From Euprymna scolopes (Eukaryota): 64,000 nucleotides of DNA. This document shows, in pieces, positions 46,781 to 47,524 of this stretch (its first letter is position 1; each line of letters starts with the position of its first letter). The DNA lies in the NCBI GenBank assembly GCA_053919585.1, contig CM132817.1; one strand, given 5' to 3'. Under the pieces are notes generated by a model, which saw nothing but the letters and a program-made list of their open reading frames with translations, did no database searches and was not told the origin of the DNA. A program made the position numbers and the translations under genes.

Positions 46781-47524
46781 TAATGGGGGTAGTTATTTAT
46801 TTGTCGCCCACCTCGGCAAAATGTGGCAGAAAGCCGGAAAGTGGGGATCCAGCAGGTTCCTCTAAAGGAGGGACACTCCTGCAATTGAAAAAATTGCCTG
46901 AGTAATCCCGTCGGCACTCCCCGGTAGGGGCGCCTCAGGCAGTAAGCAATGAACTTATTCGACCGGAAAGCCCAGTGGCAAAGCCTGGGGGGGGGTGGAC
47001 CTCCTAGGTACTACCCAGGCGGCGTACCCCAGTCCGACAGGTCCTGTCCGGTTCCCGGCCCCTCACCTCTCGGGCTGAATGTCAAGTGACGAATCCTTGA
47101 CGAGTACTACTACCCTGTCTCCCTGCAGCCGAAGCTGCTAGGAGACCTTCCCTATCAGACGAGTGATGGGGGTAGCTATTTATTTGGTGTCCACTACACC
47201 AAAATGTGGCACAAGGCCGGAAGGTAGAAATAGGCAAGCTCCCCTAAAGGAGGGGCACTCTTGCCTCATCAAAAATTGCCTGGGCACCCCCGTCGGCATT
47301 CCCCGGTAGGGGCGCCTCAGGCGACAAGCAATTAACTTGCTCCACCGGAAAGCCCGGTGGCGAGGCCTGGGAGGGTGAACCTCAGGCGGCGTACCTCAGT
47401 CCAACAGGTGCTGGACGGTTCCCGGCCCCTAACCTGTTGGGCTGAGTGTCAAGTGACGAATCCTTGTCGAGTACTACTACCCTGTCCCCCGGCAGCCAAA
47501 GCCGCTAGGAGACACATCCCATCA
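46781..47524 (-). mobile_element. Head-to-tail dimer of structured repeat family S2 (46781-47157, 47164-47524)
   Basis: Two ~360-380 bp homologous GC-rich units; fragment also at 63115-63155. Confidence 0.85.

What the first reader, a model, noticed from the sequence alone, without database searches (positions are those of the whole stretch)
46781..47524. Family S2: tandem ~370-nt structured units with self-complementary ends and the same 3' module as S1
Seen: two diverged head-to-tail units 6 bp apart and a third at 44701-45073. Unit 2 is bounded by TGATGGG...CCCATCA (unit 1 TAATGGG...CCTATCA), so the ends can close a stem. The minus strand has GCAGC-TTCG-GCTGC and CCACCGG/CCGGTGG hairpins. 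Units end in GGCCTTGTGCCACATTTTG..GTGG..CAAATAAATA, like S1's GGCCTTGTGCCTAATTTG..GTGGG..CAAATAAATA, although the bodies are unrelated. Inference: different structured cargo RNAs share one mobilisation module. Unit size and tandem layout recall metazoan retrozymes copied from circular or multimeric RNA, but no hammerhead is present.
Basis: partly seen in the sequence, partly recalled or inferred. Interest (0 to 1): 0.72.

Follow-up and report, generated by a model that had tools for sequence, protein, structure and literature searches.

The report
SINE stack inside a Copia LTR
The two tandem "structured units" are copies of a short non-coding retroposon sitting backwards at one fixed spot inside a lone long terminal repeat of a Copia-type retrotransposon. 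This nesting recurs thousands of times in this cephalopod-like genome and is a variant of a known habit of site-choosing LINE/SINE pairs, not a ribozyme-driven RNA circle.

Summary
There are two about 370-nt units (80% alike) 6 nt apart, a third older copy, hairpins, complementary ends, and a 3' module shared with S1.

The context changes the reading. Window 46761-47768 is a solo LTR of a Ty1/Copia-type retrotransposon, with TG...CA ends and a 5-bp duplication CGGAT. Both S2 units lie antisense about 29 nt from its 5' end.

- **Abundance:** the S2 core occurs about 10,800 times. In a sample of 30 arrays (1-6 units each), 24 abut such an LTR at the same site.
- **Two host families:** two Copia LTR families with no detectable DNA similarity carry S2 units that are 91-93% alike. 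S2 therefore entered them independently.
- **Retroposon marks:** S2 is 5'-truncated far more often than 3'-truncated (21 vs 3). A stand-alone copy has a 12-nt duplication. Its 3' hairpin covaries.
- **Partners:** S1 has a U2 snRNA head. A LINE 3' end is stacked at the same junction in two loci.

Best reading: S2 is a LINE-dependent, target-preferring SINE-like element that stacks in an LTR landing pad and is then copied along with the LTR.

No hammerhead or other ribozyme was found, and no circular-RNA joints or unit-length RNA ends appear in poly(A) RNA reads, so the retrozyme idea is not supported. The scan had already noted related U2-homing LINE/SINE stacks elsewhere in this genome.

The parts
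46756..46760 (.). Left copy of the 5-bp target-site duplication CGGAT of the solo LTR
   Evidence: Read directly. The same pentamer follows the LTR at 47769-47773. Full-length relatives also have 5-bp duplications.
46761..47768 (+). Solo LTR of a Ty1/Copia-type retrotransposon (the 'type-2' family), 5'-TGTAAAATG...CTTAACA-3', carrying the S2 pair
   Evidence: It is collinear at 79-86% with LTR copies L007, L021 and L023. The empty form of the same LTR flanks gag-IN-RT in L085. RNA and contig coverage stops at both ends, and reads continue from 47768 into a PBS-like GGTTATG.... No Copia coding sequence is in the window.
46761..46789 (+). LTR 5' terminal segment ending TAATGGGGG. This is the conserved landing pad (minus-strand reading CATACCCCCATTA).
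   Evidence: Reads and contigs of empty LTR copies join 46789 directly to 47536 (table 5). The empty junction occurs 810 times in the genome.
46781..47157 (-). S2 unit 1 (subfamily with hairpin GCCGAG..CGGC; here decayed)
46792..46835 (-). 3' module of unit 1 (motif GGCTTTCTGCC, hairpin, CAAATAAATAAC)
47158..47174 (-). Inter-unit junction: TACCCCCATCA (copy of the landing-pad motif) plus CTCGTC leader
   Evidence: Read directly. TACCCC follows the 3' module in 49 of 77 units sampled.
47164..47524 (-). S2 unit 2 (subfamily with hairpin GGTGT..ACACC)
   Evidence: It is 89-91% identical to units sitting in the unrelated type-1 LTR family.
47175..47218 (-). 3' module of unit 2
47525..47535 (-). 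11-nt leader TACTTCTTGTA in front of unit 2. It is the same leader seen in type-1 LTR arrays, so it probably came in with the RNA.
   Evidence: compare L027 and L003. Inference.
47536..47768 (+). Rest of the LTR, with two CCAAT motifs (47543-47547 and 47591-47595) and TATAAAAG (47615-47622) in Copia sense
   Evidence: Read directly. Promoter function is inferred only.
47769..47773 (.). Right copy of the 5-bp duplication CGGAT
44701..45073 (-). S2 unit 3, an older copy in a different, unresolved repeat context
   Evidence: Its flanks do not match either LTR type, and its right flank recurs beside the S2 fragment in L080.

Best explanation
**What S2 is.** S2 is a non-coding, highly structured, SINE-like retroposon of about 370 nt, read on the window's minus strand. 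A LINE reverse transcriptase copies it and recognises the shared 3' module: an 11-nt motif, a hairpin of variable sequence, and an AAAUAAAUA-NC end with no poly(A).

**Where it lands.** Insertion is strongly biased to one site, at or just before TACCCC(C)ATTA. This site lies about 25-30 nt from the 5' end of the LTRs of two related Ty1/Copia retrotransposon families, and S2 enters antisense to the LTR. Each insertion keeps or duplicates the motif, so further S2 units can land beside the first. An S1-like unit and the LINE itself do so as well. The result is head-to-tail stacks of 1-6 units.

**How it spreads.** The site is in U3, so stacks in a 3' LTR are part of the Copia RNA. Both LTRs of daughter copies would then receive them, and S2 would also multiply as a passenger.

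**The window copy.** It is a solo LTR of this kind with a two-unit stack.

**Shown:** the solo LTR and its 5-bp duplication; the fixed site and orientation; the abundance; the 5'-truncation bias; S2 similarity across unrelated LTR families; hairpin covariation.

**Inferred:** the identity of the LINE partner; the order of events; co-amplification by Copia; any function.
For: - **Solo LTR:** TG..CA ends and CGGAT on both sides. Coverage stops at the LTR ends, PBS-like read-through follows 47768, and joints 46789>47536 give the empty form.
- **Host is Copia:** gag / Pol_BBD / gag_pre-integrs / rve / RVT_2 lie between LTR pairs, on the strand opposite to S2. Full-length copies have 5-bp duplications.
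- **Counts:** empty site 2357 (type 1) and 810 (type 2), controls 0. S2 core 10,807, controls 0.
- **Context:** 24 of 30 sampled arrays abut an LTR head and/or tail. Array sizes were 1 (9), 2 (11), 3 (6), 4 (3) and 6 (1).
- **S2-bearing LTRs are part of elements:** they lie next to PBS+gag or next to RT.
- **Retroposon marks:** 21 units are truncated only at the 5' end against 3 only at the 3' end. Stand-alone L005 has a 12-nt duplication. S1 has 9- and 14-nt duplications and a U2 head.
- **Independent entry:** S2 units in type-1 and type-2 LTRs are 0.91-0.93 alike (max 0.98), the same as within one type. The LTR bodies have no blastn similarity, and their proteins are 53-69% identical.
- **3' hairpin:** stems GGTGT/ACACC, GCTG/CAGC, GCCG/CGGC, and TTTTGC..GCAAA changing to TAATGC..GCATT. 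Other stems show both-sided changes.
- **LINE:** a zf-RVT C-terminus plus 1.2-kb UTR, with a tail weakly related to the module, sits directly 5' of S2 in L010 and L019, which have different flanks.
- **Precedent:** SINEU-3 stacks sandwiching a duplication in Mariner-N4_AMi, and Tx1 families that prefer LTR retrotransposons (PMC4494074).
Against: - The partner LINE is not identified. Similarity between the LINE tail and the module is weak (p about 0.004-0.04 per comparison, and one comparison was not significant). Only about 100 aa of the LINE could be read.
- No Pol III head was found.
- Junctions are not simple duplications. The 6-7 nt after TACCCCATTA differ between junctions of one array.
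- The window's left junction lacks the motif copy.
- Some neighbouring units are 98.6% alike, and there are S2 satellites and higher-order duplications (L070, L075/L076). Unequal recombination or RT slippage therefore also shapes the arrays.
- No element with the same array in both of its LTRs could be fetched, so Copia-mediated co-amplification is not directly shown.
Confidence: 0.72

Rival explanations
1. S2 is a native tandem repeat of the Copia U3 region (an LTR VNTR). Template switching during Copia reverse transcription, or unequal crossing-over, makes and resizes it. The few stand-alone copies are by-products.
For: Most S2 units are in LTRs. Unit number varies from 1 to 6. Some neighbours are 98.6% identical. 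S2-derived satellite L070 and the 2.34-kb duplication L075/L076 show recombinational growth. Units are flanked by the short direct repeat TACCCCATTA.
Against: The same S2 subfamilies sit in two LTR families that share no alignable DNA beyond the terminal motif. There is a strong 5'-truncation bias with intact 3' ends, including inside arrays. The 3' module is shared with the U2-headed S1 retroposon, which is flanked by variable duplications outside LTRs. An S1-like unit and LINE ends lie at the same site. Thousands of empty LTRs exist.
Confidence: 0.15
2. S2 is a retrozyme-like element. Unit-length or circular RNA would be produced by self-cleavage, or a panhandle RNA would be copied round and round, and multimeric cDNA would be inserted.
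For: Unit size and tandem layout fit. The ends are complementary (TGATGGGG/CCCCATTA) and the fold is strong. End-to-end template jumping could also give tandem copies, as in the S1 dimer inside one duplication.
Against: No Rfam ribozyme reached E<=1 on either strand across dimer junctions. The CUGANGA core is absent. RNA raw reads showed no back-joints and no clustered ends; 'goes back' joints were seen only in contigs of a run that may be DNA and fit genomic arrays. Neighbouring units usually belong to different subfamilies. The window dimer recurs collinearly with its LTR at other loci.
Confidence: 0.04
3. The units are genes for a structured cellular non-coding RNA, arranged in small clusters.
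For: There is compensatory change in several stems, a low folding energy, and low-level RNA coverage.
Against: There are more than 10,000 copies with 8-20% divergence and frequent truncation, in a fixed position inside a retrotransposon LTR. No Rfam family matches. No discrete RNA ends were seen.
Confidence: 0.02

Closest known systems
SINEU-3 / Tx1-Mar system of crocodilians, and Tx1-8_Crp / Tx1-4_AMi that prefer LTR retrotransposons (Kojima 2015, PMC4494074)
   Same: SINEs and their LINE partners insert preferentially at one site inside another transposon. Sequential insertions give tandem SINE copies sandwiching the duplicated target. A U2-headed SINE (here S1) belongs to the same tail group. 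Tx1-clade LINEs with LTR-retrotransposon targets are on record.
   Different: Here the target is the att-proximal U3 end of Copia LTRs in a mollusc. The stacked element S2 has no snRNA head. Stacks reach 6 units and hold most of about 10,800 copies. Two LTR families that share only the terminal motif are both used. The stack probably spreads further with the LTR. Clade membership of the LINE was not tested here.
Stringent LINE/SINE pairs with a shared 3' stem-loop tail (e.g. the eel UnaL2/UnaSINE1 type; own knowledge)
   Same: There is no poly(A). A conserved 3' motif plus a hairpin whose stem covaries is shared by elements with unrelated bodies.
   Different: The partner LINE was only glimpsed (L010, L019), and its tail is only weakly similar to the S1/S2 module.
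Metazoan retrozymes (Cervera and de la Pena 2020, PMC7229834)
   Same: Tandem non-coding units of 170-400 nt, with strong secondary structure.
   Different: S2 has no hammerhead or other ribozyme and shows no circular-RNA signal. S2 carries LINE-type marks and sits in an LTR.
LTR retrotransposons with tandem repeats in U3 / 3' UTR that seed satellites (described mainly in plants; own knowledge)
   Same: A variable-number tandem array lies inside the LTR region. A derived satellite (L070) exists.
   Different: The repeat unit here is an independently mobile, antisense retroposon with a LINE-type tail. It is not a duplication of LTR sequence.

Membership tests
SINE (LINE-dependent non-autonomous retroposon) | Short, non-coding, dispersed in many copies | tested here: met
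   About 370 nt. The 33-nt core has 10,807 matches against 0 for the control.
SINE (LINE-dependent non-autonomous retroposon) | Head derived from a small RNA with an internal Pol III promoter | tested here: not met
   ARAGORN found nothing. No Rfam family reached E<=1. Only poor A/B-box likenesses were seen by eye. S1, by contrast, has U2 nt 1-46.
SINE (LINE-dependent non-autonomous retroposon) | 3' tail shared with a partner LINE | tested here: inconclusive
   The tail is shared with S1. LINE ends in L010 and L019 show a related motif and an ..AAATATC end, but the local alignment is only weakly above shuffles.
SINE (LINE-dependent non-autonomous retroposon) | Target-primed marks: variable target duplications and 5' truncation with a fixed 3' end | tested here: met
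   L005 has a 12-nt duplication. 21 units are 5'-truncated only against 3 that are 3'-truncated only.
Metazoan retrozyme | Self-cleaving hammerhead (or other) ribozyme in each unit | tested here: not met
   Rfam E-value scan of both strands across the dimer. No CUGANGA on either strand.
Metazoan retrozyme | Unit-length circular RNA | tested here: inconclusive
   No back-joints or clustered ends in two poly(A) RNA-seq runs. Poly(A) libraries are poor at showing circles.
Ty1/Copia LTR retrotransposon (the host of the units) | LTR with TG..CA ends flanked by a 5-bp target duplication | tested here: met
   Window 46761-47768 with CGGAT on each side. L051, L052 and L054 have CTTTA, GATTA and CCTCC.
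Ty1/Copia LTR retrotransposon (the host of the units) | Internal order gag - protease - integrase - RT (RVT_2) | tested here: met
   Pfam hits in that order in L051-L054. The type-2 relative L085 has the same order. The ORFs are in pieces in all copies read.
Ty1/Copia LTR retrotransposon (the host of the units) | PBS after the 5' LTR and a polypurine tract before the 3' LTR | tested here: met
   GGTTATGGGCCCAGC follows the LTR and AAAAAATAGGGAGGA precedes it. That this PBS matches the tRNA-iMet anticodon arm rests on my own knowledge.
Target-specific Tx1-clade LINE/SINE system | Insertions at one site of a host repeat, stacking with the target kept between copies | tested here: met
   Same site and orientation in both LTR families. 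TACCCC follows the 3' module in 49 of 77 units. S1-like and LINE insertions lie at the same spot.
Target-specific Tx1-clade LINE/SINE system | Partner LINE belongs to the Tx1 clade | not tested
   Only a zf-RVT C-terminus (E 1.9e-4, below Pfam's cutoff) was available. Earlier scan notes call the module-bearing LINE Tx1-like.

The most novel reading that the evidence does not exclude
S2 is a two-engine hitch-hiker. A site-choosing LINE puts it into a roughly 10-nt pad at the 5' end of Copia LTRs. The LTR cannot lose this pad, because the pad is part of its integrase-end / polypurine-tract hairpin region. Copia replication then spreads the stack genome-wide. Most of the more than 10,000 copies would then owe their existence to an LTR element rather than to the LINE. 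The antisense stacks in U3 may in turn alter Copia transcription.
Probability: 0.3. Interest if true: 0.6.

Novelty: new variant of a known kind. Interest (0 to 1): 0.42.

Why it matters
- The 'tandem structured RNA' signal in this genome turns out to be nested retroelements, so it should not be chased as a ribozyme or circular-RNA system.
- It gives a clear invertebrate case of a LINE-type retroposon with a landing pad inside LTR retrotransposons. Stacking there makes composite LTRs up to 2 kb longer and seeds satellites.
- If co-amplification by Copia is confirmed, a SINE can change its main means of spread.
- The covarying 3' hairpin shared by S1, S2 and a LINE is a ready-made candidate for the RNA handle of the reverse transcriptase.

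Tried and rejected
1. **Ribozymes and small-RNA heads.** Rfam at E<=1 on 44000-48500, gathering threshold on the whole window, and six loci gave nothing relevant. ARAGORN and a hammerhead core search also gave nothing.
2. **First working model: a retroelement with a Pol II-like 'head' plus units plus 'tail'.** I considered Penelope-like or Helitron-like layouts. I dropped this once the head-tail junction without units was found 2357 times in pairs 4.4-5 kb apart around Copia genes on the other strand. The apparent '5'-truncated heads' are damaged LTR 3' parts.
3. **Junction as a plain target duplication.** The variable 6-7 nt differ between junctions of one array, and the window's unit 2 carries a leader typical of the other LTR family. 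Part of the junction therefore probably travels with the RNA. This is left unresolved.
4. **Landing pad as a U2-like sequence (..TATACGTCC).** This rests only on a likeness recalled from memory and on one variant of a variable hexamer. It is not claimed.
5. **L075/L076 as the two LTRs of one element.** It is instead a 2.34-kb tandem duplication of LTR plus flank.
6. **Ceph-SINE membership.** The motifs quoted by Kojima 2018 (PMC5786205) were not seen in S2 by eye. No Repbase or Dfam copy was available for a proper test.

Full report
**Observation.** On the minus strand, unit 2 (47164-47524) is followed after 6 nt by unit 1 (46781-47157). A third, more decayed copy lies at 44701-45073. The three align over about 370 nt with 82% mean column identity. 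Each ends in the module GGCCTTGTGCC-ACATTTTG-hairpin-CAAATAAATA-NC. The same module ends the S1 copies at 5391(+), 53685(-) and 53873(-), with 5 matches against 0.06 expected. Unit 2 begins TGATGGG and ends CCCATCA. The RNA fold is a chain of hairpins closed by that stem, with z = -5.8 on the minus strand and -4.6 on the plus strand.

**The family.** The window lies in a 5.9-Gb assembly. A 33-nt S2 core motif has 10,807 matches at up to 3 mismatches, against 0 for the reversed control. In the loci fetched, S2 is usually in head-to-tail arrays. Among 30 loci taken in genome order, array sizes were 1 (9 loci), 2 (11), 3 (6), 4 (3) and 6 (1). Units fall into two main subfamilies. Neighbouring units are 81-98.6% alike and often belong to different subfamilies.

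**What surrounds the units.**
- Flanks of the arrays are conserved: about 300-370 nt on the 5' side and about 25 nt on the 3' side in S2 sense.
- The junction of these two flanks without any unit occurs 2357 times for one flank type and 810 times for the window's type, with controls at 0. The matches often come as same-strand pairs 4.4-5 kb apart.
- Between such pairs lie gag (Retrotran_gag_2), Pol_BBD, gag_pre-integrs, rve and RVT_2 in that order, on the strand opposite to S2.
- The pairs are LTRs. They carry 5-bp target duplications, a polypurine tract before the 3' LTR, and GGTTATGGGCCCAGC after the 5' LTR. By my own knowledge that sequence is the complement of the tRNA-iMet anticodon arm, as in Drosophila copia.
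- All copies read have their ORFs in pieces.

**The window element.** Window 46761-47768 is a solo LTR in plus-strand sense. It reads 5'-TGTAAAATG...CTTAACA-3' and has CGGAT on both sides. It is collinear at 79-86% with other copies of the same LTR family, and in L007 and L023 the same two S2 subfamilies lie in the same order. Laid reads agree:
- Coverage by family members starts and stops at the LTR ends.
- Reads run from 47768 into the PBS-like sequence.
- RNA reads and contigs of empty copies join 46789 to 47536, which delimits the S2 insert.

No Copia coding sequence is in the window. The S2 pair therefore sits antisense in the U3 part of the LTR, about 29 nt from its 5' end and upstream of CCAAT and TATAAAAG motifs in Copia sense. 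Promoter function is an inference.

**S2 is an inserted retroposon, not LTR sequence.**
- S2 units carried by the two LTR families are as alike across families (0.906-0.926, max 0.984) as within a family. The LTR bodies have no detectable blastn similarity, and the encoded proteins are 53-69% identical. The families share only the terminal roughly 38 nt that hold the site.
- Of 117 units away from locus edges, 21 are truncated only at the 5' end and 3 only at the 3' end. Truncated units also occur inside arrays.
- L005 is a stand-alone unit with a 12-nt duplication.
- S1 shares the 3' module and is a retroposon in its own right. It has 9- and 14-nt duplications. Its head matches U2 snRNA positions 1-46 (E 8.5e-5 on the 551-nt stretch, 32.4 bits, below the gathering score because only the 5' part of U2 is there). 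S1 also forms tandem copies, in the window inside one duplication and three in L003.
- The same LTR site holds an S1-like unit in L022.
- In L010 and L019, the 3' part of a LINE sits at that site. It consists of a zf-RVT C-terminus (E 1.9e-4) and a 1.2-kb UTR. The two loci are 82% alike and have different outer flanks. The LINE tail shows the motif GGCCCTGGTGCCTAAGTT and ends ..AAATATC. Its alignment to the S1/S2 module is only weakly above shuffles.

**The 3' module behaves like a structure.** The stem is GGTGT/ACACC, GCTG/CAGC, GCCG/CGGC or GCTC/GAGC in different subfamilies. Its base changes from TTTTGC..GCAAA to TAATGC..GCATT by paired substitutions. RNAalifold did not draw this hairpin, but it found 15 pairs with both-sided changes elsewhere in the unit. 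These are few events shared by subfamilies, so they are supportive rather than conclusive.

**Mechanism.** I read the system as a target-preferring LINE/SINE group that uses the LTR end as a landing pad. The 3' junction is fixed: the 3' module is followed by TACCCC in 49 of 77 units. The 5' junction varies. That is the pattern expected when the first nick is site-specific. The pad motif remains on both sides of an insert, so further insertions stack. Because U3 of the 3' LTR is part of the Copia RNA, a stack there would be inherited by both LTRs of daughter copies. S2-bearing LTRs do occur next to PBS+gag (L011, L013, L029, L021, L066) and next to the RT end (L078). I could not fetch a complete element to compare its two LTRs, so this step is inferred. 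Recombination or RT slippage also acts: some neighbours are near-identical, L070 is a 332-nt S2 satellite, and L075/L076 is a 2.34-kb duplication.

**Unresolved details.** The 6-7 nt after TACCCCATTA are very variable, both in empty type-1 LTRs and between junctions of one array. In the window, unit 2 is preceded by TACTTCTTGTA without a pad copy. That leader is typical of arrays in the other LTR family, and L005 also carries such a leader. Part of the junction therefore seems to travel with the RNA, which would place S2 source genes inside LTRs. I found no convincing promoter for S2.

**Retrozyme reading.** Rfam found no ribozyme on either strand across the dimer. There is no CUGANGA core. 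In two poly(A) RNA-seq runs there are no back-joints and no places where many molecules begin or end. The 'goes back' joints occur only in contigs of a run that may be DNA, and they fit genomic arrays. Poly(A) libraries are a weak test for circles, so this is not a proof of absence.

**Comparison with the literature.** Kojima 2015 (PMC4494074) describes SINEU-3 copies inserted mostly at one site of Mariner-N4_AMi. That paper also reports tandem copies 'sandwiching a TSD' made by sequential insertion, Tx1 LINEs with the same preference, and two Tx1 families that prefer LTR retrotransposons. The present case works the same way but differs in several respects:
- the host is a mollusc;
- the target is the att-proximal U3 end of Copia LTRs, in two families;
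- the stacked element has no snRNA head;
- the scale is larger, and the element probably gets a second ride on the LTR.

Ceph-SINE motifs quoted by Kojima 2018 (PMC5786205) were not seen in S2, but no repeat library was at hand for a proper test.

**Earlier notes of this scan.** Notes on other parts of this genome describe U2-homing Tx1-like LINEs, U2-headed SINE stacks and a shared motif-hairpin-A-rich tail. I confirmed the U2 head and the stacking of S1 here, but not the LINE's clade.

**Verdict.** The 'shared mobilisation module' is supported, and the retrozyme idea is not. The thing itself is a new variant of a known kind, of moderate interest.

Noticed in passing
L031-L054 (type-1 Copia LTRs); in Copia sense, LTR positions 17-22: A hexamer between two invariant motifs (TGTTGCAATATTTTGG and TAATGGGGTATGATCCC) is almost random among 2357 copies, with more than 30 variants. 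It is identical in the two LTRs of one element. The window's LTR family is mostly AGGAGTC at this place. It may simply be an unconstrained spacer in an old, diverse family.
   Followed up: partly
L051, L052, L054 just after the 5' LTR; window 47768 loose ends: The primer-binding site GGTTATGGGCCCAGC looks like the complement of the tRNA-iMet anticodon arm. That would mean half-tRNA priming as in Drosophila copia. Poly(A) RNA reads run from the LTR end into it, so some family members are transcribed.
   Followed up: partly
L051-L054, around the 3' LTR start: The inverted repeat CCCCATTAT ... ATAATGGGG brackets the polypurine tract and the first 22 nt of the LTR. Its LTR arm is the S2 landing pad.
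   Followed up: no
L010:1-1487 and L019 (reverse strand), 82% alike: The 3' part of a LINE (C-terminal CCHC / zf-RVT region plus about 1.2-kb 3' UTR ending ..AAATATC) is stacked directly in front of an S2 unit at the LTR site, in two loci with different flanks.
   Followed up: partly
window 53640-54110 (minus) and 5167-5431 (plus); L003: S1 is a U2-headed SINE. In the window, a full copy and a 5'-truncated copy of another variant lie inside one 14-nt duplication (ATCTTATGTTTTTG), joined at GTAGT^ATCTG of the U2 part. L003 has three such units with a 183-nt period.
   Followed up: partly
L070 (4 or more units, period 332): An S2-derived satellite: monomers lack the first 48 nt and the landing-pad motif and are joined by a different short linker.
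   Followed up: no
L075/L076 (G000 C2, about 203.009-203.014 Mb): A 2.34-kb higher-order tandem duplication carries an LTR, its S2 array and 638 nt of flank. The two arrays differ by one partial unit.
   Followed up: partly
window 47292-47337: A 45-nt piece of the S2 core is covered 3-8 times more than the rest in poly(A) RNA. It has sharp, consistent foreign flanks, so another expressed repeat or transcript shares this core.
   Followed up: no
window 45580-46680 (plus): A LINE fragment with the C-terminal part of a reverse transcriptase ORF and an A-rich end abuts the solo LTR. It ends in poly(A) and lacks the S1/S2 module, so it belongs to a different LINE group.
   Followed up: no
window 45265-45500 and L080:1037-1271: The sequence about 190 nt from unit 3 recurs (76%) beside the S2 fragment of L080. 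Unit 3 may therefore sit in a third, unidentified host repeat.
   Followed up: no
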